Position numbers and translations under genes: made by a program | Shown here: piece by piece, positions 15,071-57,065 of the stretch | Numbering within the stretch: the stretch's first letter is position 1 | How the letters are laid out: the number at the start of each line of letters is the position of its first letter | Notes under the pieces: model-generated | The model's input: only the letters and a program-made list of their open reading frames with translations | Told to the model about the DNA's origin: nothing | Databases searched by the model: none | Source: Macrostomum lignano | Lineage: Eukaryota | DNA: 64,000 nt | Assembly (NCBI GenBank): GCA_002269645.1 | Contig: NIVC01001655.1 | Coordinates: 62,001 to 126,000 of the forward strand | Reading direction: 5' to 3'

Positions 15071-16209
15071 TCTTAGTGCTCCTGTTCTCGGTTCAAGAAG
15101 AATTAATTTCCTCCGTGTAATCCTCCGGGTAAAATCCCAACCTTGGCTGCTTTTATGCCGGAATCCACAGGTAAACACACGGTGCGACACGCTCGCAAGC
15201 CCAGCCCTTACTCGGCAGGCCCATTCTGGACTGAGGAGGGGCCAGAGTTTCTCTCATCTCCATGACAACAATCGGATAAACAATAGAGAGAGAGGAGAGA
15301 AAATGAGATTCAGAGGTAGAGAGTTGAACGGGGGACGCACGGCTTTTGTTAGGATTCTCAAACAGCAGGAAGAAGTTCGTAGCGACCCGCGGCTAGTGGG
15401 AGAAAAGAGCATTTTAGAGGAAGTTTGACGAGCAAAGCGTGGAAAGGGAGGGGACGCCGGGAACAGGGGGTGGGGACCTGGACCAATATTTGTCGTAGAA
15501 ACTGGGTAAACACGCGAAGGATGAAGGCGAAGCAGCCCAGGCAGACTGAGCAGGGAGTATTGACTGATGGAGGCAGCAGCTGCTGCTTCAGCAGGACCTG
15601 CTCCACGGTTTTGGCCTCTTCCATCTCTGCCTATGGAGGGAAAACAATGGATTTCTGGCTTCGTGTGAAACAGCTGTGTAAAAGCTGGAAAATCGAAGCC
15701 CCCAAGCATTGATTGTTGCTGCTATTAGTGGACCAAACTGAGCACAGGTATAGCAGCTGATGTGGAGTGTATCGCGAAAGACTTTTGGTGCATTTAGTGC
15801 TTGCGTCCAAGCCCGCGCCGATTTCCATGCAATCCCTTCGGATCTAAAAGCAAGATCTTATAAGTGATTTTCCTATAAGTGAGTACCTCTGAACGTCATG
15901 TACTGTAAAGACGGCGTGGGTTGCACCACAAGACTATATTAAATCGTTACTGTTGTCCTCTTTGTAATGTTGCACTTTTAACGTTTTAAATACAATCGTT
16001 TCGGCTTCGTCTATGGCCCAGCCCGATATCGGGCAGAGAATGGGCCATTTCTTAAGCAGTCTTGCCCGCAAAATCAAGCAAGAATAAGTTGCATGGCTGC
16101 TCTTATGTGAAAATGAATGCACTTTTTAAGCCTCCCGATGTAGCAAGCGTTGAAGAGCCTTCAGTAAAGTTCTTCATCAATCGGTAAATTTAATTTAAAG
16201 GGACGTCCC

Positions 16210-18075
16210 CTGCCTCTCGGTGGGCGCCCGTCTCTTGGTGGGCGCCCCCTGTCTCTTGGTGAGCGCCCCTGTCTCTTGGTGGTGGCCCCCTGTCAATTGG
16301 TGGGTGCCCCTGTCCCTTGGTAAGCGCCCCTGTCTCTTGATGGGCGCCCCCTGTCAATTGGTGGGCGCCCCTGTCTCTTGATGCGCGCCCCTGTCAATTG
16401 ATGGGTGCCCCTGTCTCTTGATGGGCGCCCTTTCTCTTGATGGGCGCCCCCTGTCAATTGGTGGGTGCCCCTGTCTCTTGGTGGGCGCCCCTGTCTCTTG
16501 GTGGGCGCCCTTTCTCTTGATGGGCGCCCCCTGTCAATTGGTGGGTGCCCCCGTCTCTTGGTGGGCGCCCCCTGTCTCTTGGTAAGCGCCCCTGTCTCTT
16601 GGTGGTGGCCCCCTGTCAATTGGTGGGTGCCCCTGTCCCTTGGTAAGCGCCCCTGTCTCTTGATGGGCGCCCCCTGTCAATTGGTGGGCGCCCCTGTCTC
16701 TTGATGCGCGCCCCTGTCAATTGATGGGTGCCCCTGTCTCTTGATGGGCACCCCCTGTCAATTGATAGGCGCCCTTGTCTCTTGGTAGGCGCCCCTGTCT
16801 CTTGGTGGGCGCCCCTGTCTCTTGGTGGGCGCCCCTGTCTCTTGGTAGGCGCCCTTGTCTCTTGGTGGGCGCCCCTGTCTCTTGGTGGGCGCCCCTGTCT
16901 CTTGGTAGGCGCCCTTGTCTCTTGGTGGGCGCCCCCTGTCAATTGGTGGGTGCCCCCTGTCCCTTGGTAAGCGCCCCTGTCTCTTGGTAAGCGCCCCTGT
17001 CTCTTGATGGGCGCCCCCTGTCAATTGGTGGGTGCCCCCTGTCCCTTGGTAAGCGCCCCTGTCTTTTGGTAAGCGCCCCTGTCTCTTGGTAGGCGCCCCT
17101 GTCTCTTGGTAGGCGCCCCTGTCTCTTGGTAGGCGCCCCTGTCTCTTGGTAGGCGGCCCTGTCTCTTGGTAAGGGCCCTTTCTCTTGATGGGCGCCCCCT
17201 GTCAATTGGTAAGCGCCCCTGTCTCTTGATGGGCGCCCCCTGTCAATTGGTAAGCGCCCCTGTCTCTTGATGGGCGCCCCCTGTCAATTGGTGGGCGCCC
17301 TTGTCTCTTGGTAAGCGCCCCTGTCTCTTGGTAAGCGCCCCTGTCTCTTGGTAGGCGCCCCTGTCTCTTGGTAAGGGCCCTTTCTCTTGATGGGCGCCCC
17401 CTGTCAATTGGTGGGCGCCCCTGTCTCTTAATGCGCGCCCCTGTCAATTGGTGGGTGCCCCTGTCTCTTGATGGGCGCCCCCTGTCAATTGGTGGGCGCC
17501 CCTGTCTCTTGGTGGGCGCCCTTGTCTCTTGGTAGACGCCCCTGTCTCTTGGTAAGGGCCCTTTCTCTTGATGGGCGCCCCCTGTCAATTGGTAAGCGCC
17601 CCTGTCTCTTGATGGGCGCCCCCTGTCAATTGGTAAGCGCCCCTGTCTCTTGATGGGCGCCCCCTGTCAATTGGTGGGCGCCCTTGTCTCTTGGTGGGCG
17701 CCCCTGTCTCTTGGTAAGCGCCCCTGTCTCTTGGTGGGCGCCCTTGTCTCTTGGTAGACGCCCCTGTCTCTTGGTAAGGGCCCTTTCTCTTGATGGGCGC
17801 CCCCTGTCAATTGGTGGACGCCTTTGTCTCTTGGTGAGTAGTCCTTGGGTGGGCACCCCCTGTCTCCTATCTGGGCGCCCCTATTACCTTGGTAGGTGTC
17901 CCCACCCCTGTCTCCAAGGCCTGTGGATGCCCCGTCCAGGAGGTGACAAAGTTGTTGAAACCATGTTATTTATCAAGCTTGATTGCCTGTTTCATTTAGT
18001 TGTTGGAAGAATCAATTTTTGTCGAGCGATGGAGGGCCGCGGCCCCCCTGGTCCCCCCTCTGCGTACTCCACTGC
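16210..18075. repeat. ~1.7-kb 20/21-bp minisatellite (GCGCCCCTGTCTCTTGGTGG) followed by a hAT-like terminus
   Basis: Tandem array to ~17915; the minus strand at ~18073 begins CAGTGGAGTACGCAGAGGGGGGACCAGGGGGGCCGCGGCCC, typical of hAT/MITE ends; the other end was not found. Confidence 0.85.
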
Positions 18076-19205: not shown

Positions 19206-22200
19206 TCAATTTTCGCCAATAAGAGCCAGCAAAATTTTGCAGTAATCCCCGCTTGTGTCGTCCTTGATCCACTGGGCCAAACTTTGGCCGAATTCTTTCT
19301 GGAAGGCGTCCTTGATCTGCACCATGTCCACCTCGCAGCGGCTGATAATAATGCGCAGGAGGGTGCGGTCGTCCGTGCCTGTGGGTTCCAGTGAGATCGG
19401 CTGTGCACCCTGCATCAATTCAGACTCCCTGCATCAATCCAGGCACCCTACATCAATCTAGACTCCCTGCATCAATCCAGGCACCCTACATCAATTCAGG
19501 CACCCTACATCAATCTAGACTCCCTGCATCAATCCAGGCACCTTACACCAATCCAGGCACTGTGCATCAATCCAGACTCCCTGCATCAATCCAGGAACCC
19601 TGCGTCAATCCAGACTCCCTGCATCAATCCAGGAACCCTGCGTCAATCCAGACTCCCTGCATCAATCCAGGCACCCTACATCAATCCAGACTCCCTGCAT
19701 CAATCCAGGCACCCTACATCAATCCAGGCACCCTGCATCAATACAGGTACACAAAAGTACCAATCTAGGCACTTGGTACTGATATCCAGGCACTCACCCA
19801 GTCCTTTCATGGACTTCTGCAGCGCCTTGGCAAAGTAGGCTGGCTTATTCTGCACGCATCTGATGAGAGTCAGCATCGCTTTGAGCAGGTCGCCCGACAT
19901 CTCCGACTTCAAGGAATCCTCCAGCGTCTTGGCAGTGAGGCTCTCGTACTCGGCGAATACCGCCCGCAGGTGGGCATTGTTGTTGCCGCAGAGGATCTCA
20001 TTAAATTTGCTCTCGTCGGTGCCCCACTTGCCAATGCCGGCCTCCTGCAGGGCCTGGGCGTCCTTCTTGGCCTGCACGGGGTCGAAGGAGCTGCCCTCGG
20101 GCCGGGCGCCAGTCAGCAGCGACACCAGAATGCGCTTGAAGTGGCCGGAGGTCTCCGACATCACGTCCTCCTCGAGGTCGCGATTGTACACTGCAAAGAG
20201 ACGGAAGTTGACCGATCAGTTGTCAATCGAGACTAAGACCTGATTACTTCGACACCTAAAGTACATCGCGTACGAAGAACAAAATAAAGCAGTGCGCTCA
20301 CTGTTGTGGTAGATTTTCTTCACCTCCTGCACCTGGGCTTGGGTTCTGGTGCAGATGACCTCGATTAGGCAGTCCTCGTCCGTGCCGAGGCCTTTCATAG
20401 CCGCGCGCAGCTCCATAGCGTCGTACTCGGCCGCGCCCAGGCACAAGTTCTGGCAGATTTTGTTGAAGTTGCCGCTCAACTCGCTATCCAAATCCGCTTT
20501 GAGATCCTTGCCGTACTTCATCTTGAAGGCGCGGACAATCTCCTGACGCTGAGAGACGGTCCGATGGCCCAGAACATTGATGATACTCTCCTCGTTGGTG
20601 CCGAGGCCTTTCATGGCCTTGCGAAGCTGCTCGGCGTCGGCGTTGGCGTTGAAGCTGTCGTAGGGCTTCAGCGTGCCCTCCTGGACGTACTCCTCCTGCT
20701 GGAAGTAGGCCTCGTCCACTGGCTCAGGCGGCTGCTCCTCCGGCGCCTTCAACTTAATGGCATCGGCCTTCTCGTTACTGGTCTGCTTGACCTCCGTCTC
20801 CACCTTGTGGTTCGGCGGGGGCGTCGGGTTCCTGCGCCTCGGCGGCGGCGGAGTCGGCGCCTTCTTGGCTGGCGGCTGTTTCGGCTTCGGCGGCGGCTGC
20901 ACCTTCGGCTCGCTCAATGGCTTCTTGTAGCCCGGCTTGCCGATCTGCACCGTCAGCAGGTAGGAGTCGGTTGACTCGTCCAGCTCGGCTGAAATCACCT
21001 GCGTCAGGTCGGGTCAGAGGAAGGGCGTGGTGAAAAACAACTTAAAAGCGTTGAAATGTGACTCCAGGACTCCAGGGTTGAAATGTGACCAGCACAAAAT
21101 GGAATTCATAGGCAAAATGATCCCACTAGTACCAGTATGAAAATGTGGCATCAACCTGAAGTTCCTTTAACTCCAAGATAAACTTCAACGAAGTTTTAAA
21201 AGCTTTCCACAAATGCTTGGTGTAAATAATTGGTCTGAGGCTAAAACGTTCCAACCTTTCCAAATTTTGGCCCGCCAACGGCCGCCTGAAAGTCGCCATC
21301 GGAGCGAGCGTACTGGAGCAGGTGAGCGTAGACGTGCTGCAGCTGCTTCTTAAAGTCGCCGTCTCCTTTGCTGACGGGCAGGCAGGCTGGGTCAGCTGAC
21401 ACGGGCTGCTGCGGAGGCTGCGGAGGCTGCTGCTTCTTTTTGTCTTCAACCAGCCGGCGAATGTCCTGCAGCGTGCTCTGTCGAGTTTCGTCCATGCGTT
21501 GGCTCAGCTGAGCAGCGATAAGGTTGAGCTGCTGCGGCGTCACTCCCTGCGGCGTGGCAGATTAGATTATCATAATCATAATTATTTCCCTAAATATTAC
21601 AAGGAAATACAGCTGGTATTTACACAGCTCGGAGCTCTCCTAGATGCCATTGATTTTGTCTTTTGAATTAAAAACAACTGTGTAACAGTGCAAAGATGAT
21701 TCTCACCTGATCCGGAGCAGGCAGCGCCGGCTGCGGCTGTTGCTGTTGCACCTGCGGTGCGAAGCCGCCCCTGAAGTTGACATTGTTCGGCGTGCGCACT
21801 TCCCAGCCCATCAAGCCGCCGGCTGGGCCGCCGAAGCCGCCACCGCCTGTTCCGGCGCCTGGTGGCCCGCCGCCGTACAGATTGATCTGCGTGCCGGAGT
21901 GATTGACCGCGGCGAAGCCCTGATCTGGCGGGATGCCCAGCTCGTCCAGCGGCGACGGCTCGGCAGGCTTGGGAGGAGCGTCTTTGTCCCAGGCTCGGCG
22001 TCTGGAGCCGCCACCAGAGGCGCCTTTGCGGGTGCGCAGGCCGTCCTCAAGGTCGCTGTCCCAGCTGCGGGGTAGGGAAGTTCGAATGCTATTAGCTATC
22101 AGGTCTTTTAACTGGTGAGGAATCAGATAGCGCTTATTGAAGTCTAACAGGTGACACTCCTGTCTAACAGGTGACACTCCTGTCTAACAGGTGACACTCC

Positions 22201-22913
22201 TGTCTAACAAGTGACACTCCTGTCTAACAAGTGACACTCCTGTCTAACAAGTGACACTCCTGTCTAACAAGTGACACTCCTGTCTAACAAGTGACACTCC
22301 TGTCTAACAGGTGACACTCCTGTCTAACAAGTGACACTACAGACACTCCGATCAGGATGGCACTAATATCTAACAGGTTCCACCTTTGTCCATTAGGTGA
22401 CAACAACTCTTACAGTCGCTCTCACTTACGCAGTAGAATCCGTGGTGACGCTGCAGTCGTCATAGCAGTCGTCGGTCTCATTCCAACCGTGTATATCCTC
22501 ACAGTGGTAGGTTCTCGTCGTCACTGCGCTTAATTGCCGGGTAACCCGGTGCATAGCAACCGCCTTGACAACCCGCTTGCCAGGCTTCAAACAGAATGGG
22601 GCCCGATATTTAAACGTGACCTCGCGTCCATTGACTTTTCGCTGTTCCGGTTTGGGTCGAGTTCCGTCCGTAGTAAAGAAGATGTGGCAGTTTGAGGAGT
22701 CTGCGAGGCAATAAGGCAATATTGCTGAGTATTTAATGTTATTTTTTAACGCTTGTCTCTAAATAAGCCGCTCAATTTCAAAATCAAATGAGACCCACCG
22801 CATGCCATCTCGATATACGTAGCTGAATCAATGCAGTGAGCTGGTTTTCCAGACACTGGGCCTTTCAGTGCAGTTAGCACTGGTGCAGCAATACCACCTG
22901 CAGGCGACATCAT
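19206..22913 (-). CDS. Chimeric protein: DZANK1-like N-terminal segments fused to a four-repeat annexin core; 7 exons, 765 aa
   Basis: Exons 22913-22799, 22700-22430, 22064-21707, 21546-21256, 20998-20302, 20190-19798, 19378-19206; all GT-AG, phases consistent, total 2298 nt. Annexin repeats MKGLGTNE, MKGLGTDE, GKWGTDE, MKGLGTDD; N-terminal IFFTTDGTRP...VKAVAM and FKKQLQHVYAHL...PKFGKVISA resemble DZANK1. Confidence 0.88.
19405..19745. repeat. 19-bp minisatellite (CCCTGCATCAATCCAGACT/GGCA) in the last annexin intron
   Basis: Tandem units read directly. Confidence 0.9.
22144..22345. repeat. 20-bp minisatellite (TGTCTAACAAGTGACACTCC) in intron 2 of the annexin-fusion gene
   Basis: About 10 tandem units. 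Confidence 0.95.
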
Positions 22914-26700: not shown

Positions 26701-26720
26701 ACAGACAGACACAGACAGAC

Positions 26721-26767
<47 letters not shown>

Positions 26768-26770
26768 GGC

Positions 26771-26827
<57 letters not shown>

Positions 26828-26918
26828 CAAAGACAGACAGACAGACACAAAGACAGACAGACAGACAGACAGACACAAAGACAGACAGACAGACACAAAG
26901 ACAGACAGACAGACACAA

Positions 26919-26959
<41 letters not shown>

Positions 26960-27002
26960 CAAAGACAGACAGACAGACACAAAGACAGACAGACAGACAC
27001 AA

Positions 27003-27085
<83 letters not shown>

Positions 27086-27118
27086 AAGACAGACAGACAG
27101 ACAGACACACAGACAGAC

Positions 27119-27191
<73 letters not shown>

Positions 27192-27224
27192 AAGACAGAC
27201 AGACAGACAGACACACAGACAGAC

Positions 27225-27277
<53 letters not shown>

Positions 27278-27298
27278 AAGACAGACGGACAGACACAG
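26701..27298. repeat. (CAGA)n microsatellite, ~600 bp
   Basis: Read directly. Confidence 0.98.
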
Positions 27299-28016: not shown

Positions 28017-31000
28017 ATGGCCGCATGTAATCGGCAGAGCAGCCACGAAAGTGACCAGGTAATTAACTACAACCACCTCTTTTCTGACTGACTCGGCACA
28101 TCCTTGCTAGCTGTACCAAATGCGGTCCGCAAAGTCTCTCTATCCGGCCCTCAGGTCCTTTGTAACTTTACAATTAGCAATCCGGTCTGCTTAGGGTTTG
28201 TGTCTGTTGTCAGCTTCCTTCTCTCTAATATCCTTTATCTTTTCTTTTCTCACCTTTTATCCTTCTCTCCTCTCATTTCTCTTATCTCCTCATTCCCCCT
28301 CCTCTCCTTCTCCTCTCCTCTTTTCCTTCCTCTCCTTTCTCCTCTCCATTCTCTCCTCTCTCGTCTAATTTTCCCCTCTCTTCTCCTAAATTCCCTCGCC
28401 CCTCCTTTCTTCTCTCTGTCTTCTCTCTTTTCTATTCCCTCTCCTCTCTCCACTCCTTTGGCTTGCAGTCATACACTATACACTCGGCTCTCTATCTGGT
28501 CTTTGAGGTAAGCTAAGTTTGGCGACCCCTACAGCAGAAAGTTTCTTAAATGTCCAAGCGTTCAACATGAAGACAGAAAGAAGCGTCAATCTGGATAGGT
28601 TTGAACTATAGAATAGAATAGAAAAGACGCATAGGGTTACAGAATCCTAGCGCGCACGCGTTCGCAAAACAGCTCAGAGGGGCAGAGAGCAGTGTTACTC
28701 GGGGTCAGGTCAAGGTCTCTGAGGTCGTCAGTCAGAGCCTGGATTAGCGTGGCAGCACGGCCTTGGCCGCCTCGAAGCCGTTCTCACGGTGGGTGAAGCA
28801 ACGCCATCGCGAGAGGGTTCACTTCACCGCGACCGTGCCGTCGCAGAACGTGGCCGGCGAGGGTTCGTCGCCGCCACCGCAGGACAACGCTGAGAGGCGG
28901 AAGGCCGTTGCGCCGGTCGAGATCGCGGTTCGAGATGGTCTCGGGGAATCGGATGCCGAGTGTGTAGCGGAGAAGCGCCCGGTAGATGCCGTTTAGCGCG
29001 TTTTCTCGGGTGGTGGTCACCGGTACGGCTTCCAGTCCGTAGAGCAGGATCGGTTCGACTGTGGCGCGGAAAAGCTTGATCTTGAGGGCGTCAGGCGCTG
29101 CGGAGCTGAACATAGGGCTGATCTTGACTGCAGCACGCCAGGCTTGTGCTTTCGTAGGTTTGAACTAATTGAACAACTAGGAAATATGGGAATATGGATG
29201 AAAGCAGTCTGTACAGAACTTTATCTAAGTGTCCTACACTCGCATTTAGAATAGACGATTTTTATTCAATACGCTTCGCAGGAAACCGCTAGTCTGCTGG
29301 ACCCCGCGAGTTCGGAGTCAGCTGATGGCCAGCCAATTGAGGCCAGTCCCATTTGCAAGCTAAAATGCCTCGTCCTTGGTCTGGTTATCGTTGCCATCGG
29401 GGTCGTTGCCTCGCTGAACGAAGGCGCCGCGACCTACCAGGAGAAGCACGAGATCCCGCTCAACAAAAGTAACTGGCCATGGCACCAGAGAGACAACCCA
29501 AACTTGTGGGTCTGCTGGGTTATCAAGTGCATTCAATTGTTGATGGGCATTGCCTCAATGGTCTTCCTGAACAAAAGAGTAATGCAAGAAGGCAGAATTA
29601 CCAATGCTATTTATCAAAACCCGGCTCTACCGCAGTTACGATATTTGCTGGGAAATTTGCGTCGATTTCAAGAACTGCCAGAGAACTTTTCCAACTATCC
29701 AACCAAAATGTTTATTTCAATATTCATCATATTTGCCATCCTTGGCATAGTCTGTGCCATTGCTGAGACAATTAGCGACCTCATCGAGGCAATTGATCCT
29801 AATGTATACGAGATGCTGCCGTACGCGGATGTACTGCGCTGTGTCCTGCTGTTTGCATTCATACTACTGCAGGCTTGGTTCTTTACTAAAAACAATCGGA
29901 TGTGTCTGAATTGGAAGCTGAACGGAGCCTGGGTAGCCATGACAATTATACTGGCTACCAATGTGTCATTGTGGTTCTTCTACATCTCCTATGAAATTTC
30001 CAAGATAGCCGGGGAAAACCACACTTGCCATACCAATGAAACAACGAGGAAGAAACTTCACGAGAGCTTTGATATGATAGTCGAGATCATGTTCCCGTTT
30101 CTGATTGAATTCTTTCTCATGGGAGCCATACTGGCAGCCAGTTTCTTGTCTAACATTGGGCGGCTGAGCTGTATTTTAAAACAGCTGCAGCAGAGTGTCC
30201 CCTATCTGACTAACGACGCTATTCGGGACAAGCTGTTCAGCTCGTCGGCTGCTCAACGAAGTCTAAGAAATTTCAAATACCATCTTCGTAAACACCTGCG
30301 CAGCCTGCTCTTAGGCATCGCGTTGGCCGGTTCAGCTATCCTCATCTCCTTGATGATGAAACTGTTTACATGCGAAAGAGAACCGTGGCACCTCCTGACA
30401 CTCTACATTCTGGCCGTACTATTCGTGGCCGGATCGGTATGCTGCGTTGTGCTGCTGCGAGCCTTCAGGGCAGCTGGAGAAGCTACGGTTGAGACGAAGG
30501 CTCGAACTGCGGCAGACAGGCTGATGCTCTGGTTCTGTGTTGTGGCCGTAGTAGTAAATGACCTGAACCGGTTATGGGGCTTGTTTCAGAGTGACAAGCC
30601 ACTCTACAATGCTATTGGCACCGGTTTGGTTATTGTGTTTGACATCGTACAGAGCGTGCTGCAAGTTTACGTGCTCGAGTGCATCCTGCTGAGGCGGATT
30701 AAGTCCACGAACGTGCAGGTTGGCGGCAGTCACAGTTGGGGCGCTCGCTTACTCACCGTTCTCATGGTGATCAATGCGCTTGAGTGGCTGGTCAGCGCCG
30801 TAGCCTTCAGTCTGTTTTTCTTCACCAGCAACAGCCAAAGAAGTGCAGCCACCATGGCTCTGGTAGTGATTAGCGCACCTCTGCAGGTGTTCTTCCGGTT
30901 TCATTCGGTTGGCTGCATCCATGAATTTCGGAAGCACTGTCGCGAGGTCAACGAGCCGAGAAGGCCAGTACCGCCCAGCATCCCGATCGACTTCCCGAGC

Positions 31001-31030
31001 ATAACACCTCGGTATGGAGCTGTGGTATGA
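28017..31030 (+). CDS. Otopetrin-like proton channel, copy 1 (2 exons, 596 aa)
   Basis: Exon 28017-28058 (MAACNRQSSHESDQ, donor GTAATT) and exon 29282-31030; multi-TM protein with otopetrin motifs ILATNVSLW, FPFLIEF, FFRFHS; same architecture as copy 2. Confidence 0.85.
28100..28531. mobile_element. hAT-like MITE with CT microsatellite in the otopetrin copy 1 intron
   Basis: Arm homologous (inverted) to 14105-14225; terminus AAGTTTGGCGACCCCT; a remnant sits at the orthologous intron position in copy 2 (38885-39130). Confidence 0.65.
28740..29150 (-). mobile_element. RTE-type non-LTR retrotransposon fragment (C-terminal part of the RT ORF)
   Basis: KIKLFRATVEPILLYGLEA...LLRYTLGIRFPETISN...LAGHVLR matches the post-RT motif pattern of RTE/CR1-type LINEs; absent from the copy 2 intron. 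Confidence 0.8.
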
Positions 31031-38782: not shown

Positions 38783-40923
38783 ATGGCAGCAGCTGGTCGA
38801 CGGAGCAGCTACGAAAATAACCAGGTAATTAACTAAATAACCACCTCGTTTCTAACTGACTTTGTACAACTTAGCTGTATAGAGGTCAGCAAAATCCACA
38901 TACGGGCCCACAAAGCCTCTCTCTATCGGGCCGTCGGGTCCTTCGAAACTTCACAATTAGCAATCTGAACCCTCAAAGGCTTCTCTCTTTTCTTAGCTCA
39001 CATATCTCTAATCTCTCCCTTCTCCCTTCTCTCCTTTCTTTCCCTTCTCTCCTCCTCTCTCCTCTTCTACGCTATCTCTCATCTCATCCTTTATCTCCCC
39101 ACCTCTCATTTCTACTATTTTCTTTTCTCTATTTTCGTTTTTAAAAGTCTACGAGTAGTCGTAAGTGTTCAACAGACTTGGCTCGAACTTATAAAATACC
39201 GAGAAAGATAGATGAAAATGGTCTGTACGAGTACAAAGCTTTATCTCTGTATCCTATAAGTAGTTTCTGTGGTCGCTCGCAATTAAAAGAAATGATTTTC
39301 TTCATATCTTTGCAGGAAACCGCTAGGCTGCTAGACTCAGAGAGTTCGGAGTCAGCTGAAGATCAGCCAGTCGAGGTCAGTCCCATTTGCAAGCTAAAAT
39401 GCCTCGTCCTTGGCCTGGTCATTGTCGTCATCGGGGTCGTTGCATCACTTAACGAAGGCACGGTGACCTACCAGGAAAAACACAATAAAAGTAGGCTCAA
39501 CAAAAGTAGCTGGCGATGGTACAACAGGGACAACCCAAACCTTTGGGTCTGCTGGGCCATCAAGTGCATTCAGTTGTTGATGGGGATCTTGTCAGTTGTC
39601 TTCTTGCTTAAAGAAGTAATGAAAAAAGGATACTTATCAAATTTGCCTCGATTTCAAGAACTACCAAAGAAATTTTCCAACTATCCAACCACAATGTTTA
39701 TTTCAATATTCATCATATTTGCCATCCTTGGCATAGTCTGTGCCATTGCTGAGACAATTAGCGAGCTCATCAATTCAATTGATCCTAATGTATACGAGAT
39801 GCTGCCGTACGCGGATGTACTGCGCTGTGTCCTGCTGTTTGCATTCATACTACTGCAGGCTTGGTTCTTTACTAAAAACAATCGGATGTGTCTGAATTGG
39901 AAGCTGGACGGAGCCTGGGTAGCCATGACAATTATACTGGCTACCAATGTGTCATTGTGGTTCTTCTACATCTCCTATGAAATTTCCAAGATAGCCGGGG
40001 AAAACCACGCTTGCGATACCAATGAAACAACGAGGAAGAAACTTCACGAGAGCTTTGATATGATAGTCGAGATCATGTTCCCGTTTCTGATTGAATTCTT
40101 TCTCATGGGAGCCATACTGGCAGCCAGTTTCTTGTCTAACATTGGGCGGCTGAGCTGTATTTTAAAACAGCTGCAGCAGAGTGTCCCCTACCTGACTAAC
40201 GGCGCTGAAATGAATTTCAAAGACCATCTTCGTAAACACCTGCACAGCCTGCTCTTAGGAATAGCGTTGGCCGGTTCAGCTATCCTCATCTCCTTGATGA
40301 TGAAACTGTTCACATGCGAAAGAGAACCGTGGCACCTCCTGACACTCTACATTCTGGCCGTACTATTCGTGGCCGGATCGGTATGCTGCGTTGTGCTGCT
40401 GCGAGCCTTCAGGGTAGACGGGGAGGCTAAAGTTGAGACGAAGGCTCGAACTGCGGCAGACAGGCTGATGCTCTGGTTCTGTGTTGTGGCCCTAGTAGTA
40501 GATGAACTGAACCGGTTATGGGGCTTGTTTCAGAGTGACAAGCCGCTCTACAGTGCTATTGGCACCGGTTTGGTTATTGTGTTTGACATCGTACAGAGCG
40601 TGCTGCAAGTGTACGTGCTCGAGTGCATCCTGCTGAGGCTGGAAGTGCGGGTAGGCGGCAGTCCCCGTTCTCAGGGCGGCAGTGTTGGCGCTCGCTTACT
40701 CACCGTTCTCATGGTGATCAATGCGCTTGAGTGGCTGGTCAGCGCCGTAGCCTTCAGTCTGTTTTTCTTCAACAGCAACAGCCAAAGAAGTGCAGCCACT
40801 ATGGCTCTGGTAGTGATTAGCGCACCTCTGCAGGTGTTCTTCCGGTTTCATTCGGTTGGCTGCATCCATGAATTTCGGGAGCACTGTCGCGAGGTCGACT
40901 CGACGAGCCCAGCATCCCGATAG
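38783..40923 (+). CDS. Otopetrin-like proton channel, copy 2 (2 exons, 549 aa)
   Basis: Exon 38783-38824 (MAAAGRRSSYENNQ) and exon 39316-40923; near-identical TM core to copy 1; intact ORF. Confidence 0.85.
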
Positions 40924-48296: not shown

Positions 48297-49938
48297 ATGA
48301 TTTTCGAAGTCGCGAATCTCCGCAGCCTGCTGCTAACTGCTGCTTTGTTGGCCACTCTTGGCAACTGCACGCTGCTTGACGATGAGTACCGACTGGAGCG
48401 TCACCTGAAGTCTCTGGAGTATAGCACCAACATTGTGCCCATCCGGGATAAGACAAAGACGAGACAGGTGAAACGTTTTGCACGCACGCGTAGCATTCCG
48501 AGAGTACAGCTCAATATTATGAGCTAGAGTGACAAGTGGATGCGGGTAGTCATTGGTCTGCTCACCTATCTAAGTAAGGGTGTCTTTGGCAGGATGATAT
48601 TAGCTAACCGTGAGAGATTAAAGGTGAAAGATTCGATAAATATCGCAAGTTTTTTATTCAGTTACAAATAAAAGACTTCTCTGCAGCAAGTCAACATTAA
48701 TTTAATCAATTCACTGTATGGGCTCAGATTTTTAATTGATTGATTTCTAACCAGAGCAATAATTATATCTTTAAGTAATAGCTCGTACCGCACCAATGCA
48801 GGTTATATTTATGGCCTTCCATCCGGTGAGCCTCGTTGAGCTGAACGGCGCTAGCCAGGTCATCAAAGTGATGGGGATGCTCAGCATTCGCTGGTTCGAT
48901 GAAGTGCTGGTGTGGAACAAGACCCACTTTAACGTGTCCTTCTTGCGCCGGACTCCTGAGGAGATCTGGTACCCCAGCGTCTACGTGTTCAATGGCAACA
49001 GCATTCTGAAGCCCGAGCTGCCGATCGGCCTGTACCACCTCAACAGCTCCGTCACAATGGCCTACGCAGTCTTCAAGCAGACCTTCGAGGTCAACTGCCA
49101 GATGAACATGAGCAAGTTTCCCTACGACACGCAGGCTTGCCAAATCATTCTGGTCGTGGACTACGACACGGATATACCTCCGGTACTGAGCCTACAGGAC
49201 CGCAAACGCAACTACCGAGCTGCCTACTTTGAGCACAGCGAGTGGCGCCTCGCAGACCTGCGCAGCCAGCCAGAGAACCTGTGGTTCAATTTTTCCCAGG
49301 TCGACCAGACTAAAAACACGCTGCAAGCCTTTGTTGTCAGGATGGAGTTCCAGCGCCTCGGACTGTACTACACTCGCAACATCGTCATTCCGGTTACTAT
49401 GCTCACTATACTGCAGATGCTCGTGTTTGTCATTCCGATCGAGAGCAACGAGAAAATTACGTTCGGAGTGACGCTACTACTGGCCTTCACCATCTATATG
49501 CTGCTGTTTGAGAAGCTCATTCCCAAGGCTCCGACTGTGCCTGCAATCTTCTCCTTCATCACGAGCGCTGTTGTGCTGTCGGCCGTGTCAGTGCTACTCA
49601 GCTGCTGCGTGCTGGTTGTGTACTACATGCACGAAGAGCTGCCTATGCCGCAGTCCGTGCACTGGCTGCTGTTCGACATTCTGGCTCGTCTGCTTCGCGT
49701 CCACCTGCCCGCCCAGTACCGTCGCCGCCCCCAACATGCGGGAGTCGCGACTGCCGTTCTGGAGCTCAATGGCCAGGAACTGCTGCCCAACCAGCAGCCG
49801 CAGCCGCCAACAACTCTGAAGCCACAGCTCCGACACCGTTGGCGCCTCGCTGCTCAGGTTCTGGAGCGATTGCTGACGCTGCTGAGCATCCTGTGCGTGT
49901 GCGGGCTGTTGGGAAATTATTACAGGACCTTGCTGTGA
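48297..49938 (+). CDS. Divergent Cys-loop ligand-gated ion channel subunit 1 (nAChR-superfamily, non-alpha), 2 exons, 435 aa
   Basis: Exons 48297-48467 and 48802-49938; signal peptide; IWYPSV loop A; Cys-loop C-QMNMSKFPYDTQA-C; four TM helices; EKITFG before M2. Confidence 0.9.
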
Positions 49939-50850: not shown

Positions 50851-51364
50851 TATTATGCGAGCGTATTTCGGAGAGATTTTGGTTTGGTTTTAGCCCGTAA
50901 TACAAAAATTTTTGTCGGTATTATTCTTAATCCTTGCCTGTTTCTCCATCGTAAAAAATTCTGATGAACAAACTTATTTATCATATCGCTAGACCTCGAC
51001 ACTACGTCTGTTTTAAAAGTCAGCTTCGAGCTATCAGTGACATTTAAAATGACTCTATTGTGTTGTGCCACAATCAATTTTAAATATTTGACGTATTTTT
51101 ATAACTCACTGATGTCACCTGGTGTTGGTTTGTTTTGCCGCATTCTTCCATTGCTACTGTGTGTTGAAGTATAGCTCGTAGGTTGTTGCATATTGACGCT
51201 CATACAATTTTTGAAAAAAGGCCATTAGAGAGTAAAAAAACAGTGACTGACTTCTTGTAATTTTTTTCTAGCTCGTACTTTGATTTGAGTAGCTGTGCTT
51301 TCGTAATATTTTGTTTGGTTTCAAAGAATTTAAAACGCACTTTGAAATTATCACACTCTTCCAG

Positions 51365-52585
51365 CAGCTGAGACAAATCAAAGCGACTCGTCGACAGCAA
51401 CAGCTCCCGCTGCTGCTGCTGCTGCTGCTGCTACTGCTACTGACTGCTTCAGCGGTTCTCGCCGACTCCAAAGAACTGGCACTTCAACGGTATCTTGACA
51501 GTCGCGCCGTCAGCCGAAACATCTGGCCTCTGAAAGTTGACAGTCCCGAGGCCGCGTGGTTCCTGGTCGTCGACTTCGCGCCCCTAGCCCTGGTGCAGTT
51601 GGACTCCACATCCCAGTCGCTCAAACTGCTCGCCTCTCTGCAAATCGACTGGCCCGATGAGGTCAACGTGTGGGACGTCGGCCGCCATCCGCTTCGACTG
51701 ACGCATCGACGATCATCGGAGCTCTGGCACCCGACGGTGTTGCTGCAGAATGCTCTGGACAGTTCGAGCGGCCTGCTGAAACCGCAGGGCTCGATCTTGC
51801 TGCGTCACCAGGCTAACAATAAAACCCTAGGAAGCATGAAAATCCGTCGGGTCTTCGATGTTGGCTGTTTGGCCGATATTCGAAAGTTCCCTCACGACAC
51901 TCTGTACTGCGATCTGGTCTTCGTGGTGATGGGAGCGCCGCCCAACGCCGAAGCTATTGCACTTCGCCCGGTGCCAACATCTGGTTACGTTGCTCACAGC
52001 GAGTGGCAGCTCATTAATGTCAGCACGCGAACAAAGGTTGAGCTGTTTCCGGGTTACCTGGAGCAGGTCCCAGCCCTCACTGTTGCACTGCAGTTTCAGC
52101 GGAACGGAGATTTCTATCAGCGAAACCTGGTGCTGCCAGTCTGCGTACTGACGGTCCTGCACGTCGTGGTGTTCGCGGTGCCCGCCCAGCCAAGCCGCAA
52201 GCTGACGCTGGGAAGCAGCATCCTGCTCGGCTTCATTCTCTACCTGTTGCTGTTTGAGCAGATCATACCAAAGTCGCAGCAGCTACCATCGATTTTCTTT
52301 GCCTTCCACGCCGCTTTGATTTTCTCTGTCGCGACCATCGTGTTGGCGGCCGGGGTGTTGATCATGTACCACAAGAGGGGCTGGGGGCCGCCGAGGTGCC
52401 TGCAGATGCTGCTGGTTCGCCTGCTTGGCAGCTGCGTGTTGCTGCCGGCTGAGCGGACGCTGAGCAGCTCGTCGCGACCGCGGCAGCTGTGGCGGGGGGC
52501 CGCCAAGGTCGCCGACCGAACCCTGACCATCGCTGCAGTTGTGGTGGCAGCCATCTGCGTTGCAAGTTTCTCGCGATATTCCTAG
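51365..52585 (+). CDS. Divergent Cys-loop ligand-gated ion channel subunit 2; one large exon, start codon not located
   Basis: Acceptor CTTCCAG at 51364; poly-Leu signal peptide; LWHPTV; Cys-loop C-LADIRKFPHDTLY-C; four TM helices; PSRKLTLG before M2; no in-frame ATG upstream of the signal peptide. Confidence 0.85.
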   Translation, partial: QLRQIKATRRQQQLPLLLLLLLLLLLTASAVLADSKELALQRYLDSRAVSRNIWPLKVDSPEAAWFLVVDFAPLALVQLDSTSQSLKLLASLQIDWPDEVNVWDVGRHPLRLTHRRSSELWHPTVLLQNALDSSSGLLKPQGSILLRHQANNKTLGSMKIRRVFDVGCLADIRKFPHDTLYCDLVFVVMGAPPNAEAIALRPVPTSGYVAHSEWQLINVSTRTKVELFPGYLEQVPALTVALQFQRNGDFYQRNLVLPVCVLTVLHVVVFAVPAQPSRKLTLGSSILLGFILYLLLFEQIIPKSQQLPSIFFAFHAALIFSVATIVLAAGVLIMYHKRGWGPPRCLQMLLVRLLGSCVLLPAERTLSSSSRPRQLWRGAAKVADRTLTIAAVVVAAICVASFSRYS

Positions 52586-53519
52586 AGATGGAATTCATGG
52601 AAGTTGCACAATTAAGTGAACAATGGATTTTGCAGTCGTGGACCCTGCGGTTGAGGCTACTTGTTTATAATTATTCTTAAGTGGATTTAACTGGTTTGAA
52701 AGGGTAAAGTGCGGCCACCAGGTCCCTGATTTTCTCTAATTCTTCAGCGATCCTTCAGCGATTCCTTTAGCGATCAAAGAATAAAGGCAGGAAACCAAAT
52801 GATTTATTTACCCGAAGGTTTACCTGAAACTGAGTAACGTAGAAATGAGCATGCAATAGGTATTACAGTCACTTGTCCTAAAATTGGTGCAGATTTAGTT
52901 AGGCATTGACTACCTTGGTGTACTGTTATGGGCATCGACTACCTGTAACAGTTTTACGTATTCCCCCAATTTCTATTATTCTTGATCTTACCTCTATATT
53001 TACCTTGAAGTTAGAATAAGCTTCAACACTGACACCCAACTTAAAAACCCTTTTGTCTCCCCGAGCTTCAAATGCTCGATACTTATAAGGAACTCCCAAA
53101 TTCGCGATCTAATCTAATCCTAAGCTGAAACTACTGATAGTAGTGCAAAAGCATTTCTGCACTAATACAATATTTTGCCACATCTTTTAACATCGCTGAA
53201 AACATTGTAACGATTAAAAGTACGTAATTGTGCATAAAGATGCTGGTTTTAAGCACTAAAAAAGTAGGAAATTTTCGTAGACAGGTTTATTTGAATGTAA
53301 AGTAATAAAATACAGCTATGGCGGCCTGCCTTTTGTAATTTTTGTCAATTTCAACTACAATAAACATTTTAATCGTAATTCAGTGTCTCGGACCTGCGAC
53401 CAAAAATGAGACCAAAAAATCCATTTCCGCCGTCAAACGCTACCGCTCCGATTCTTTGAATGGTTGATTCATATCGGGAATTGAAGTGGGGGCTCAACTG
53501 TCTCACCGCGACTGTCTCA

Positions 53520-56500: not shown

Positions 56501-56570
56501 AGACACAGGAGAGGAGACACAGGGAGAAACAGGGAGAGGAGACACAGGGAGAGGAGACAAGGAGAGAGGT
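53520..56570. repeat. ~3-kb purine-rich 15-bp minisatellite (GGAGAGGAGACACAG)
   Basis: About 200 units with variant units; source of the 700-1080 aa spurious ORFs. Confidence 0.98.
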
Positions 56571-57065
56571 GGCAGCAAGGAATTTGAAGTCCTCGTACAA
56601 TGGATTGGCGTCATGTGCAAAAAAGGTCGTCATAAACTTTTATCAGCAGTCGCGGGACATCATGACGTGTTTCAATCCTTTTCATCCCCCCAGCATTTGA
56701 CCAGACAGAAAAATGTGACACTGGATTTATTTGCTACAGTGGGAAAAGTTCGGGGCAAACAAAATATTCTCTGCCCCGAAATCGAACCAGCATAAATGGA
56801 GAATTACAGTCATTATGAGTCAGGAATGCGACCCTCCCTCCGTCGCAAAGGGGCTGGTTTAGGGTTCGAATCTTTGTCAAATAAAAATAGCGGCCTCAGG
56901 AACGCTGTGGTTGTCGAAAAAGACGAATATCGTAGGAGGTTGTCGATTTGGTTTCGCCCTGATTTAACCCTCAGAAAGCAAAAAGATGTCTACTGTAGAA
57001 ACTGCCTGTAGTGTTCCATCCGCACTATTCAATTCATATTCCCTAACTTTAACTCCCTACTGTAA

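What the first reader, a model, noticed from the sequence alone, without database searches (positions are those of the whole stretch)
19206..22913. DZANK1-annexin chimera: zinc ribbons and ankyrins replaced by a Ca2+/phospholipid-binding annexin core
Seen: one phase-consistent 7-exon ORF (765 aa): N-terminal MSPAGGIAAPVLTAL...IFFTTDGTRP...VKAVAM; a Gly/Pro/Gln-rich linker; GDFKKQLQHVYAHLLQYARSDGDFQAAVGGPKFGKVISAEL; a Pro/Lys linker; four intact annexin repeats. The second DZANK1-like block continues across the 21256/20998 junction into the same exon as annexin repeats 1-2, so this is not two neighbouring genes. Established: DZANK1 has an N-terminal Fn3-associated-like domain, double zinc ribbons, a conserved block and C-terminal ankyrins, and acts in dynein-based transport in ciliated photoreceptors; annexins bind membranes Ca2+-dependently. 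Inference: a Ca2+-triggered membrane adaptor for ciliary or dynein trafficking. I cannot tell whether the architecture is already described in other invertebrates.
Basis: partly seen in the sequence, partly recalled or inferred. Interest (0 to 1): 0.72.

Follow-up and report, generated by a model that had tools for sequence, protein, structure and literature searches.

The report
Annexin with a DZANK1-derived head
This flatworm (Macrostomum lignano) gene encodes a calcium-dependent membrane-binding annexin whose long front half descends from the ciliary-base protein DZANK1; the fusion is real and ancient, is filed in databases simply as 'annexin', and its function has not been studied.

Summary
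A 7-exon, all GT-AG, minus-strand gene (22913-19206) encodes 765 aa. It is identical to existing Macrostomum lignano annotations named 'Annexin'. The C-terminal 313 aa form a canonical four-repeat annexin core with intact Ca2+-site motifs.

The N-terminal 450 aa are homologous to DZANK1:
- Ig-like Fn3_assoc domain: hhalign E 1e-40.
- Central helix-helix-hairpin block: hhalign E 1e-15.
- A positionally equivalent TQ motif.
- Three intron positions of identical phase shared between fusion and DZANK1-type genes; the window keeps two.

The zinc ribbons, which bind NINL in vertebrates, and the ankyrins are absent.

The 'chimera' is not a local novelty. The same architecture, with a conserved head/core junction motif, occurs in flatworms, nemerteans, a brachiopod, a snail and a priapulid. 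These heads form one clade (96% bootstrap). M. lignano also keeps a separate canonical DZANK1. A starfish gene carries the DZANK1-like head plus ankyrins plus annexin.

Function is inferred only. The protein is probably a Ca2+-switched membrane tether for whatever the retained DZANK1 modules bind, plausibly at the ciliary base. The dynein-adaptor reading is weak, because the NINL-binding part is lost and the TQI motif is an unvalidated LC8 anchor. I found no paper describing this family.

The parts
19206..22913 (-). Whole gene: 7 coding exons (22913-22799, 22700-22430, 22064-21707, 21546-21256, 20998-20302, 20190-19798, 19378-19206), 765 aa, or 764 aa from the second ATG at 22910.
   Evidence: splice sites, phases, translation. 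(identical to UniRef A0A1I8I7R3 and PAA65411.1). (AT-rich spacers on both sides).
22492..22886 (-). Ig-like beta-sandwich domain (Pfam Fn3_assoc / CHB_HEX_C_1), aa ~10-108, split by intron 1 (phase 1, IEMAC|D). Homologous to the N-terminal domain of DZANK1.
   Evidence: Pfam above cut-off. (hhalign prob 100%, E 1e-40 vs DZANK1 alignment). (pLDDT ~90). (intron position and phase shared with the Hymenolepis fusion and the Asterias gene).
21872..21904 (-). Invariant linear motif N-H-S-G-T-Q-I-N-L-Y-G (aa 183-193) inside a predicted disordered stretch (aa 110-244). Positional counterpart of the [SAG]TQT[VT]GL[FY] motif of canonical DZANK1. Candidate LC8/DYNLL-type anchor variant.
   Evidence: N183, S185-N190 and G193 invariant in 9 sequences. 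(motif in every fusion protein; TQT-GLF in DZANK1s and in the starfish form). (disordered context). (LC8 motif rules and the TQI caveat).
21433..21537 (-). Long single alpha-helix (aa ~252-286, VTPQQL...DETRQSTLQDIRRLVED), conserved within the fusion family.
   Evidence: conservation. (helix, pLDDT 80-90 with the deeper alignment).
20942..21390 (-). DZANK1 central conserved block ('block 2', aa ~301-364): helix-helix-beta-hairpin module, split by intron 4 (phase 0, FGK|VISA) and continuing into exon 5.
   Evidence: 34% identity, E 1e-11 to Tubulanus DZANK1 aa 497-569. (hhalign prob 98.6%, E 1e-15). (pLDDT 90-96). (same phase-0 intron after GK in Ciona DZANK1, the Asterias gene and the Tubulanus and Hymenolepis fusions). 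(no solved structural relative).
20678..20941 (-). Pro/Lys-rich linker (aa ~365-452) ending in the conserved head/core junction motif AYFQQEEYVQEGTLKP. It lies in the same exon (exon 5) as block 2's C-terminal half and annexin repeats 1-2.
   Evidence: single ORF/exon. (junction motif shared with Hymenolepis, Tubulanus and Lingula; remnants in Bradybaena and Priapulus). (other species have an intron just before EGTLKP; it is lost here).
19206..20677 (-). Annexin core, four repeats (aa ~453-765), with MKGLGT/KWGT loops and acidic caps in all four repeats, followed by the stop codon at 19208-19206.
   Evidence: Annexin x4, E 5e-95. (annexin A6/A4/A5 structures, E 1e-171 to 1e-85, aligned over aa 452-763). 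(Ca2+-site motifs).
22142..22338 (.). Intron 2 minisatellite, 20 bp x 9.9. Not coding.
19405..19747 (.). Intron 6 minisatellite, 19 bp x 18. Not coding.

Best explanation
SHOWN. This is one intact, already annotated Macrostomum lignano gene. Its product is an annexin: a four-repeat Ca2+/acidic-phospholipid-binding core. The ~450-aa N-terminal 'head' descends from a duplicated DZANK1 gene. The head keeps DZANK1's Ig-like Fn3_assoc domain, a TQ-anchored linear motif in a disordered stretch, a long helix and the central helix-helix-hairpin block. It lacks the double zinc ribbons and the ankyrin repeats. The gene belongs to an old orthologous family present in flatworms, nemerteans, brachiopods, gastropods and a priapulid, and it exists alongside a canonical DZANK1 in the same genome.

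INFERRED. When Ca2+ rises, the annexin core docks on acidic-phospholipid membranes. The head supplies partner binding and probably self-association (long helix plus block 2, possibly helped by an LC8/DYNLL dimer at the TQ motif). The protein would therefore act as a Ca2+-switched tether between a membrane and whatever structure the retained DZANK1 modules bind. In mammals DZANK1 sits at the basal body and has been modelled, as a dimer with LC8, on the A-tubule of transition-zone doublets. The most likely site is therefore the base of cilia. With the NINL-binding zinc ribbons gone, a role as a NINL-dynein cargo adaptor is unlikely.

My confidence is about 0.95 for the identity and evolution part and about 0.3-0.35 for the ciliary-base tether mechanism. 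The single figure given below is a blend.
For: - Gene and architecture.
- DZANK1 homology of the head. An annexin-free profile finds Fn3_assoc+DZR+Ank proteins that RefSeq names DZANK1 at E ~1e-36 to 1e-42, each in two stretches. BLASTP gives E 2e-17 and 1e-11. hhalign gives E 1e-40 and 1e-15. Introns of identical phase are shared with canonical Ciona and M. lignano DZANK1 genes.
- Separate canonical DZANK1 in M. lignano.
- Age and single origin within protostomes. The same architecture occurs in six phyla. The junction motif is conserved. The fusion heads form a clade with 96% bootstrap whose internal order follows the species tree.
- Structure. The beta-sandwich is confident, the middle is disordered and contains the invariant motif, and the helix plus block 2 are confident with a deep alignment.
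- Literature. DZANK1 binds NINL through its zinc fingers, pulls down DYNLL1/2 and localises to the basal body (PMC4617706). A DZANK1 dimer plus an LC8 dimer have been assigned to transition-zone A-tubule protofilaments A06-A07 (bioRxiv 10.64898/2026.06.11.731632). LC8 binds TQT-anchored strands in disordered regions (PMC6607443).
Against: - No expression, localisation or binding data for this protein or any orthologue were found.
- The LC8 link is weak. The DYNLL site on DZANK1 has not been mapped to its TQT motif in any paper I could search. The anchor here is TQI (TQV in some phyla). A TQI peptide from rotavirus VP4 failed to bind LC8, and several true TQT peptides are non-binders.
- The DZANK1 placement on doublets comes from a preprint and rests on AlphaFold docking into a sub-nanometre map.
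- Neither retained fold has a solved relative of informative function.
- Flatworm annexins are otherwise studied as tegument proteins, so a non-ciliary role is quite possible.
- I did not examine transcripts directly.
Confidence: 0.6

Rival explanations
1. The DZANK1-derived head has been re-purposed, and the protein is a general membrane annexin with no special link to cilia. It would act in vesicle aggregation, membrane repair, or tegument or secretory-cell biology. The head would serve only as a dimerising or scaffolding extension, much like the long heads of annexins A7 and A11.
For: The head has lost two of DZANK1's four Pfam-recognisable parts, including the only one with a mapped partner. 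The TQ motif has drifted from TQT to TQI/TQV, and extra family-specific blocks (WDVRTPN and the QQL helix) have been inserted. The fusion heads form their own long-diverged clade. The flatworm annexin papers read here deal with tegument components. Databases name orthologues A4, A6, A7/11 or A11.
Against: The beta-sandwich and block 2 have stayed recognisably DZANK1-like across more than five phyla under evident constraint. That implies a conserved partner, which is probably shared with DZANK1. There are no data placing the protein in the tegument or in secretions.
Confidence: 0.33
2. Gene-model artefact: two neighbouring genes, a truncated DZANK1-like gene and an annexin gene, were read as one.
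For: Gene predictors do merge neighbours. I examined no cDNA. In Hymenolepis and Tubulanus the head and core lie on separate exons.
Against: - In the window a single uninterrupted exon encodes the end of block 2, the linker and annexin repeats 1-2.
- There is no stop, AT-rich spacer or promoter-sized gap between the halves.
- The linker's junction motif is conserved between phyla.
- The same architecture is predicted independently in more than 20 species by different pipelines.
- A 60%-identical M. lignano paralogue keeps it.
Confidence: 0.02
3. A recent, Macrostomum-specific domain swap in DZANK1 itself: the species' DZANK1 had its zinc ribbons and ankyrins replaced.
For: None beyond the architecture itself.
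Against: M. lignano has a canonical DZANK1 elsewhere. Orthologous fusions exist in Nemertea, Brachiopoda, Mollusca and Priapulida. They share a junction motif and form a 96%-supported clade that excludes the same species' DZANK1s.
Confidence: 0.01
4. The similarity of the N-terminal half to DZANK1 is only a generic Ig-like/Fn3_assoc domain match, and the protein is an ordinary annexin with an unrelated long head.
For: Fn3_assoc and CHB_HEX_C_1 domains are widespread, including many bacterial multi-repeat proteins among the profile hits. Foldseek finds only generic beta-sandwiches.
Against: A second, non-Ig block matches DZANK1 specifically (E 1e-15; alignment). The order of features is the same: domain, then TQ motif, then block 2. 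Three intron positions with identical phase are shared between fusion genes and DZANK1-type genes.
Confidence: 0.01

Closest known systems
[quoted passage not shown] Ciona XP_078492254, Tubulanus XP_074645402, M. lignano BOX15_Mlig021025
   Same: Both have the N-terminal Ig-like Fn3_assoc domain (E 1e-40) and the central helix-helix-hairpin block (E 1e-15). A TQ-anchored motif lies between them. They share the phase-1 intron in the sandwich and the phase-0 intron after 'GK' in block 2.
   Different: There are no double zinc ribbons, which form the NINL-binding region in vertebrates, and no ankyrin repeats. The anchor is TQI, not TQT. Extra conserved segments (DQGFAA, WDVRTPN, a 35-aa helix) are present. 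The C-terminus is an annexin core. It is a paralogue that coexists with true DZANK1.
Annexins with long N-terminal heads or extra cores (vertebrate A7, A11; eight-repeat A6)
   Same: The four-repeat core is canonical, with type II Ca2+-site motifs. The best solved matches are A6, A4, A5, A8, A3 and A7. A long head precedes the core, partly low-complexity and rich in Gly/Pro/Gln. Relatives in a snail and a priapulid have 8 and about 11 repeats, as A6 has 8.
   Different: The head contains two folded, evolutionarily traceable domains taken from another gene family. A7 and A11 heads are Gly/Tyr/Pro-rich and disordered (general knowledge). None of the annexin papers I read describes such a head.
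Asterias rubens / A. amurensis 'DZANK1-like isoform X1' (XP_033629438, 908 aa)
   Same: It has a DZANK1-type head (Fn3_assoc, IGTQTVGLF, block 2) followed by a four-repeat annexin core and has no zinc ribbons. It shares the phase-1 and phase-0 introns.
   Different: It keeps the ankyrin repeats between block 2 and the annexin core and keeps the DZANK1-type TQT-GLF motif with its short spacing. It lacks the protostome junction motif. In the tree it falls on the DZANK1 side with weak support. It is therefore either the ancestral state or an independent fusion.
LC8/DYNLL client proteins (TQT-motif hub partners)
   Same: A short, invariant motif with Gln at its centre and Thr at position -1 sits in a disordered region next to a long helix. 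That is the usual context in which LC8 promotes dimerisation.
   Different: Position +1 is Ile or Val, not Thr. A TQI peptide was reported as a non-binder, and the flanks do not match the preferred positions -4, -3 and +2 well. Binding is untested.

Membership tests
Annexin (Pfam PF00191) | Four (or a multiple of four) ~70-aa annexin repeats forming the core | tested here: met
   four stretches, 311.9 bits against a cut-off of 25; aligned over aa 452-763 to solved annexin cores (A4 E 3e-100).
Annexin (Pfam PF00191) | Type II Ca2+-binding loops (GxGT, or KWGT in repeat 3) with an acidic cap ~38 residues downstream | tested here: met
   MKGLGT plus an E/D cap in repeats 1, 2 and 4. Repeat 3 reads IGKWGTDE...SEMSG (direct reading). 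This is motif-level evidence only.
Annexin (Pfam PF00191) | Ca2+-dependent binding to acidic phospholipid membranes | not testable with these tools
   Needs liposome co-sedimentation with recombinant protein.
DZANK1 | N-terminal Fn3_assoc (Ig-like) domain starting at residue ~2-5 | tested here: met
   (hhalign E 1e-40).
DZANK1 | Double zinc ribbons (Pfam DZR; ~10 CxxC pairs) | tested here: not met
   no DZR hit; no CxxC in any fusion protein, against about 10 in canonical DZANK1s.
DZANK1 | Central conserved block ([38 protein letters not shown]...) | tested here: met
   E 1e-11; prob 98.6%, E 1e-15; alignment; fold.
DZANK1 | C-terminal ankyrin repeats | tested here: not met
   no Ank hit. An annexin core takes their place.
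DZANK1 | Conserved TQT-[VT]-G-L-[FY] motif upstream of the central block | tested here: inconclusive
   the window protein has SGTQINLYG (most other fusion proteins SGTQINLWG) in the equivalent order, but with a different +1 residue and different spacing. The motif is too short for hhalign.
DZANK1 | Shared gene structure (intron positions and phases) | tested here: met
   the phase-0 intron after GK is shared with Ciona DZANK1. The phase-1 intron in the sandwich is shared with the Asterias DZANK1-like gene. The phase-2 intron at AV..|K is shared between the Hymenolepis fusion and the Ciona and M. lignano DZANK1 genes.
DZANK1 | Binding to NINL and to DYNLL1/2; basal-body localisation | not testable with these tools
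   Known for vertebrate DZANK1 (PMC4617706). NINL binding maps to the zinc fingers, which are absent here.
Protostome DZANK1-head annexin orthologue group (defined here) | Head (Fn3_assoc, N[HY]SGTQ[IV]N motif, helix, block 2), then a basic or Pro-rich linker, then the junction motif [YF]F.TE[ED]Y.QEGTLKP, then the annexin core | tested here: met
   The clade has 96% bootstrap support.
LC8/DYNLL client | 8-residue strand motif anchored by TQT (or an accepted variant) in a disordered region, with demonstrated binding | tested here: inconclusive
   The context is disordered and the motif invariant. The TQI anchor is not validated, and one TQI peptide is a reported non-binder. Binding cannot be tested here.

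The most novel reading that the evidence does not exclude
The DZANK1-head annexins are an overlooked, ancient bilaterian class of Ca2+-switchable linkers between the ciliary-base cytoskeleton and the overlying membrane. The cytoskeletal side would be centriole or transition-zone doublets, bound through the retained DZANK1 modules and an LC8 dimer. This would be a calcium-regulated counterpart to the static Y-link and transition-fibre connections. The class has no counterpart among the vertebrate annexin structures or named DZANK1 relatives seen here, which would explain why it was never noticed.
Probability: 0.15. Interest if true: 0.75.

Novelty: new variant of a known kind. Interest (0 to 1): 0.45.

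Why it matters
Annexin heads decide where and with whom each annexin acts. Here the head is a traceable, folded module borrowed from a ciliary-base protein, not a short or disordered peptide, and it has been kept for hundreds of millions of years in at least five protostome phyla.

This has three uses:
1. It gives annexin biology a new, well-defined subfamily that current names (A4, A6, A7/11, A11) hide.
2. It shows which parts of the poorly understood DZANK1 protein form an evolutionarily separable unit: the sandwich, the TQ motif and the central block. These function without the zinc ribbons and ankyrins, which helps to dissect DZANK1 itself.
3. It offers a concrete, testable candidate for Ca2+-regulated membrane attachment at the ciliary base in a tractable model, Macrostomum lignano.

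If the head has instead been re-purposed, the family is still a clean example of an old gene fusion followed by domain loss and intron loss.

Tried and rejected
- A word-indexed homologue search with the head found only fusion proteins and no DZANK1. That could have been misread as 'no DZANK1 homology'. The exhaustive profile search corrected it.
- hhalign of the full alignments returned only the N-terminal domain. Block 2 had to be tested on trimmed alignments. The TQ motif and the long helix could not be aligned by profile methods.
- Foldseek against the PDB gave only generic Ig/Fn3 sandwiches for the head and nothing for helix plus block 2 (best E 1.7).
- Literature searches found no description of the family: DZANK1+annexin, annexin+Fn3, annexin+'Fn3 associated', the Mlig locus tag, and DZANK1+TQT.
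- I tried to identify the S. mansoni orthologue and its expression from candidate Smp IDs in the 2013 annexin survey. This led nowhere.
- A planarian paper reports a dzank1 RNAi phenotype (fewer TH+ neurons), but I could not tell which paralogue was targeted.
- Genomic loci for Tubulanus and Mya DZANK1 were not on record, so Ciona was used instead.
- I rejected four readings: a merged gene model, a recent Macrostomum-specific swap, a chance Ig-domain match, and a NINL-dynein adaptor role. The reasons are given under the rival explanations.
Full report
1. WHAT IS IN THE SEQUENCE

On the minus strand between 22913 and 19206 there are seven coding exons: 22913-22799, 22700-22430, 22064-21707, 21546-21256, 20998-20302, 20190-19798 and 19378-19206. 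All six introns have GT...AG ends. The spliced reading frame is 2298 nt, giving 765 codons plus TGA. The GC-rich gene body (48-61% GC) is bracketed by 26-30% GC spacers at 18.4-19.2 kb and 22.8-24.0 kb, so there is no room for hidden neighbouring exons nearby. Two introns hold minisatellites: 20 bp x 9.9 in intron 2 and 19 bp x 18 in intron 6.

The predicted protein is identical to UniRef A0A1I8I7R3 (764 aa, starting at the second of two adjacent ATGs). It is also identical to NCBI PAA65411.1 (BOX15_Mlig011209g1) apart from that model's four missing N-terminal residues. It is 99% identical to BOX15_Mlig011209g4 of Macrostomum lignano. So the window is M. lignano and the gene is already annotated, under the name 'Annexin' or 'hypothetical protein'.

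2. THE TWO HALVES

Residues ~453-765 are a canonical annexin core. Pfam finds four repeats (E 5e-95). Solved annexins A6, A4, A5, A8, A3 and A7 align over aa 452-763 at E 1e-171 to 1e-85. All four repeats keep the Ca2+-loop motif (MKGLGT three times, IGKWGT in repeat 3) and the downstream acidic cap (and direct reading).

Residues 34-103 pass the Pfam cut-offs for Fn3_assoc (29.3 bits against 23) and CHB_HEX_C_1.

Exon 5 is a single open reading frame (20998-20216). It starts inside the second conserved head block (VISAELDESTDSYLLTVQIGKPG), runs through the Pro/Lys-rich linker and encodes annexin repeats 1-2. Head and core are therefore joined at DNA level. The immediate neighbours are otopetrin-like and Cys-loop channel genes, not an annexin or a DZANK1.

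3. IS THE HEAD REALLY DZANK1-LIKE?

A word-indexed search with aa 1-451 returned only proteins with the same architecture and no DZANK1. I therefore built an annexin-free alignment of the head (A1) and ran it exhaustively against 1.84 billion representatives. It gave 1091 hits. Hits of 600-900 aa that match in two stretches have the Pfam architecture Fn3_assoc + DZR + Ank. RefSeq names them DZANK1 in Ciona, Tubulanus and Mya, and their E-values are about 1e-36 to 1e-42.

Pairwise BLASTP of the window head against Tubulanus DZANK1 aligns aa 5-120 with 3-117 (35% identity, E 2e-17) and aa 301-373 with 497-569 (34% identity, E 1e-11). Profile-profile comparison gives probability 100%, E 1e-40 for the N-terminal domain, and probability 98.6%, E 1e-15 for block 2 (alignment).

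(a) A shared motif. Canonical DZANK1s have a conserved [SAG]TQT[VT]GL[FY] motif between the zinc ribbons and block 2. Every fusion protein has N[HY]SGTQ[IV]N[LV][WY]G in the same order, and it is the most invariant stretch of the head outside the sandwich.

(b) Shared introns. Exact splice-junction solutions show introns of identical phase at homologous positions (with for the window):
- Phase 0 after 'GK' in block 2: window FGK|VISA, Hymenolepis VGK|VIGG, Tubulanus fusion IGK|ILNA, Asterias MGK|ITSA, canonical Ciona DZANK1 LGK|ILGT.
- Phase 1 in the sandwich: window IEMAC|D, Hymenolepis IELGN|E, Asterias IEIKS|A.
- Phase 2 at ...AV..|K: Hymenolepis fusion, M. lignano DZANK1 and Ciona DZANK1. 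This one is lost in the window gene.

The head is therefore derived from a DZANK1 gene, not merely similar to one.

4. WHAT WAS LOST AND WHAT WAS KEPT

No fusion protein has a DZR hit or a single CxxC pair, whereas DZANK1s have about ten. None of the protostome fusions has ankyrins.

AlphaFold2 models give the following anatomy:
- A confident beta-sandwich, aa 10-108 (pLDDT ~90).
- A disordered stretch, aa 110-244, carrying the invariant TQ motif at 183-193.
- A 35-residue helix, aa 252-286.
- With a 30-sequence alignment that mixes fusions and DZANK1s, a confident helix-helix-beta-hairpin for block 2 (pLDDT 90-96).

The folds themselves therefore do not reveal an activity.

5. HOW OLD AND HOW WIDESPREAD

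The architecture Fn3_assoc + head blocks + annexin occurs in:
- many trematodes and cestodes;
- the nemerteans Lineus and Tubulanus;
- the brachiopod Lingula, where one copy is named 'annexin A11';
- the gastropods Bradybaena and Candidula (the Bradybaena protein has eight annexin repeats);
- the priapulid Priapulus, with 11 detected repeats, probably three tetrads.

The segment just before the core, [YF]F.TE[ED]Y.QEGTLKP, is conserved in Macrostomum, Hymenolepis, Tubulanus and Lingula, with remnants in the snail and the priapulid.

A neighbour-joining tree of sandwich plus block 2 (177 columns, 200 bootstraps) puts all protostome fusion heads in one clade with 96% support. The branching order is priapulid, brachiopod, nemerteans, flatworms. 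The clade excludes the canonical DZANK1s of M. lignano and Tubulanus. M. lignano itself has a canonical DZANK1 (BOX15_Mlig021025, Fn3_assoc + DZR + Ank). The simplest history is a DZANK1 duplication and a fusion to an annexin before the protostome radiation.

Tubulanus and Hymenolepis have an intron exactly at the head/core boundary (EEY.|.EGTLKP), and Hymenolepis has another in the linker.

A starfish gene (Asterias rubens and A. amurensis, named 'DZANK1-like isoform X1') has sandwich + IGTQTVGLF + block 2 + ankyrins + a four-repeat annexin core. Its last ankyrin exon reads through the usual DZANK1 C-terminus into a Lys-rich linker, followed by an ordinary 1.2 kb intron and then the annexin exons. 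It lacks the protostome junction motif and sits on the DZANK1 side of the tree with weak support. I cannot say whether it is the ancestral intermediate or an independent fusion.

6. HOW IT PROBABLY WORKS

Shown: an intact annexin core and a conserved, partly folded DZANK1-type head.

From established annexin biology: Ca2+-dependent docking on acidic phospholipids, with the head determining partners.

From the DZANK1 literature:
- The zinc-finger region binds NINL.
- DZANK1 pulls down only DYNLL1/2 among dynein subunits.
- It localises to the basal body (PMC4617706).
- A 2026 preprint assigns a DZANK1 dimer with an LC8 dimer to protofilaments A06-A07 of transition-zone doublets, using AlphaFold-guided docking.

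Inference: the fusion keeps the DZANK1 parts that are independent of NINL. It would therefore tether a membrane, in a Ca2+-dependent way, to whatever those parts bind, most plausibly a structure at the ciliary base. The long helix, block 2 and perhaps LC8 would provide dimerisation.

Caveats:
- The DYNLL site of DZANK1 is not mapped to its TQT motif in any paper I could find.
- LC8 motifs are anchored by TQT 'or a variation'. However, a TQI peptide from rotavirus VP4 did not bind, and several TQT peptides, including a GTQT one, were non-binders.
- No expression or localisation data exist for any family member.

I put the identity and evolution claims at about 0.95 and the ciliary-base tether mechanism at about 0.3-0.35. 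A re-purposed, non-ciliary annexin role is about equally likely.

7. COMPARISON WITH WHAT IS KNOWN, AND NOVELTY

As an annexin it is a full member at the sequence level: the repeats and Ca2+ motifs were tested and met, and the biochemistry was not testable. As a DZANK1 it fails two name-giving features (zinc ribbons, ankyrins). It should be called a DZANK1-derived paralogue, not a DZANK1.

Public records show the domain pair in precomputed Pfam columns but name the proteins 'Annexin', 'Annexin A4/A6/A7-11/A11' or 'uncharacterized'. The genome-wide survey of parasite annexins treats N-termini only as 'variable' (PMC3795353). No searchable paper links annexins with DZANK1 or with Fn3_assoc.

The gene itself is therefore known. 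Recognising a conserved DZANK1-head annexin family, and its history, appears to be new. I rate it a new variant of a known kind, of moderate interest.

8. SAFETY NOTE

All proposed experiments use the free-living laboratory flatworm or recombinant protein.

Noticed in passing
window 16207-17836: A 1.6 kb minisatellite lies about 1.4 kb downstream of the gene's stop codon: 20-bp unit CCCCTGTCTCTTGGTGGGCG x ~81, 80% matches. It accounts for the GC-rich, strongly AT-skewed block seen in the composition profile.
   Followed up: partly
window 26701-27295: An (ACAG)n microsatellite of ~151 units explains the AT-skew of 1.0 and the spurious 237-263 aa ORFs listed there.
   Followed up: partly
window 22142-22338 and 19405-19747: Introns 2 and 6 of the gene are largely made of minisatellites (20 bp x 9.9 at 98% identity; 19 bp x 18 at 81%). 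Short tandem arrays with 19-20 bp units recur in this window.
   Followed up: no
window 29504-31030 (+) and 39178-40923 (+): Two large ORFs both match Pfam Otopetrin (E 1e-13 and 2e-11). This is probably a tandem pair of otopetrin-like proton-channel genes.
   Followed up: no
window 48796-49938 (+) and 51311-52585 (+): Two ORFs have Cys-loop ligand-gated ion-channel ligand-binding and transmembrane domains. This is a likely tandem pair.
   Followed up: no
window 53369-56633, both strands: Very long overlapping ORFs run on both strands (up to 1083 aa), with only a sub-threshold Extensin-like match (62 bits against a cut-off of 105). This looks like low-complexity repetitive sequence, not a gene.
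   Followed up: no
M. lignano proteins P0001, P0216, P0217, P0218 (near-identical) and P0002, P0219 (60% identical in the head): The species carries at least three near-identical copies of this gene on different contigs, plus a divergent paralogue pair with the same architecture. This fits the known duplicated state of the M. lignano genome.
   Followed up: partly
P0025 (Bradybaena similaris, 1096 aa) and P0028 (Priapulus caudatus, 1288 aa): These family members have the same head but 8 and about 11-12 annexin repeats. The annexin core has been duplicated in tandem behind the DZANK1-type head in some lineages.
   Followed up: no
P0033 (Glandiceps), P0039 (Batillaria), P0058 (Pinctada), P0046 (lacertid lizards, isoforms): These are DZANK1-like proteins or isoforms with sandwich + TQT + block 2 + ankyrins and no DZR hit. 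Loss or skipping of the zinc-ribbon region therefore recurs in the DZANK1 family independently of annexin fusion.
   Followed up: no
L002 (M. lignano canonical DZANK1 locus): The canonical M. lignano DZANK1 gene has lost the ancestral phase-0 'GK|' intron in block 2. It has a different phase-0 intron 22 codons upstream (VVAHLK|VYTNNNT). Intron turnover is high in this genome.
   Followed up: partly
literature (PMC13594227): RNAi of a planarian gene called dzank1 reduced the number of regenerated dopaminergic (TH+) neurons. The text read does not say whether that gene is the canonical DZANK1 or the annexin-fused paralogue.
   Followed up: no
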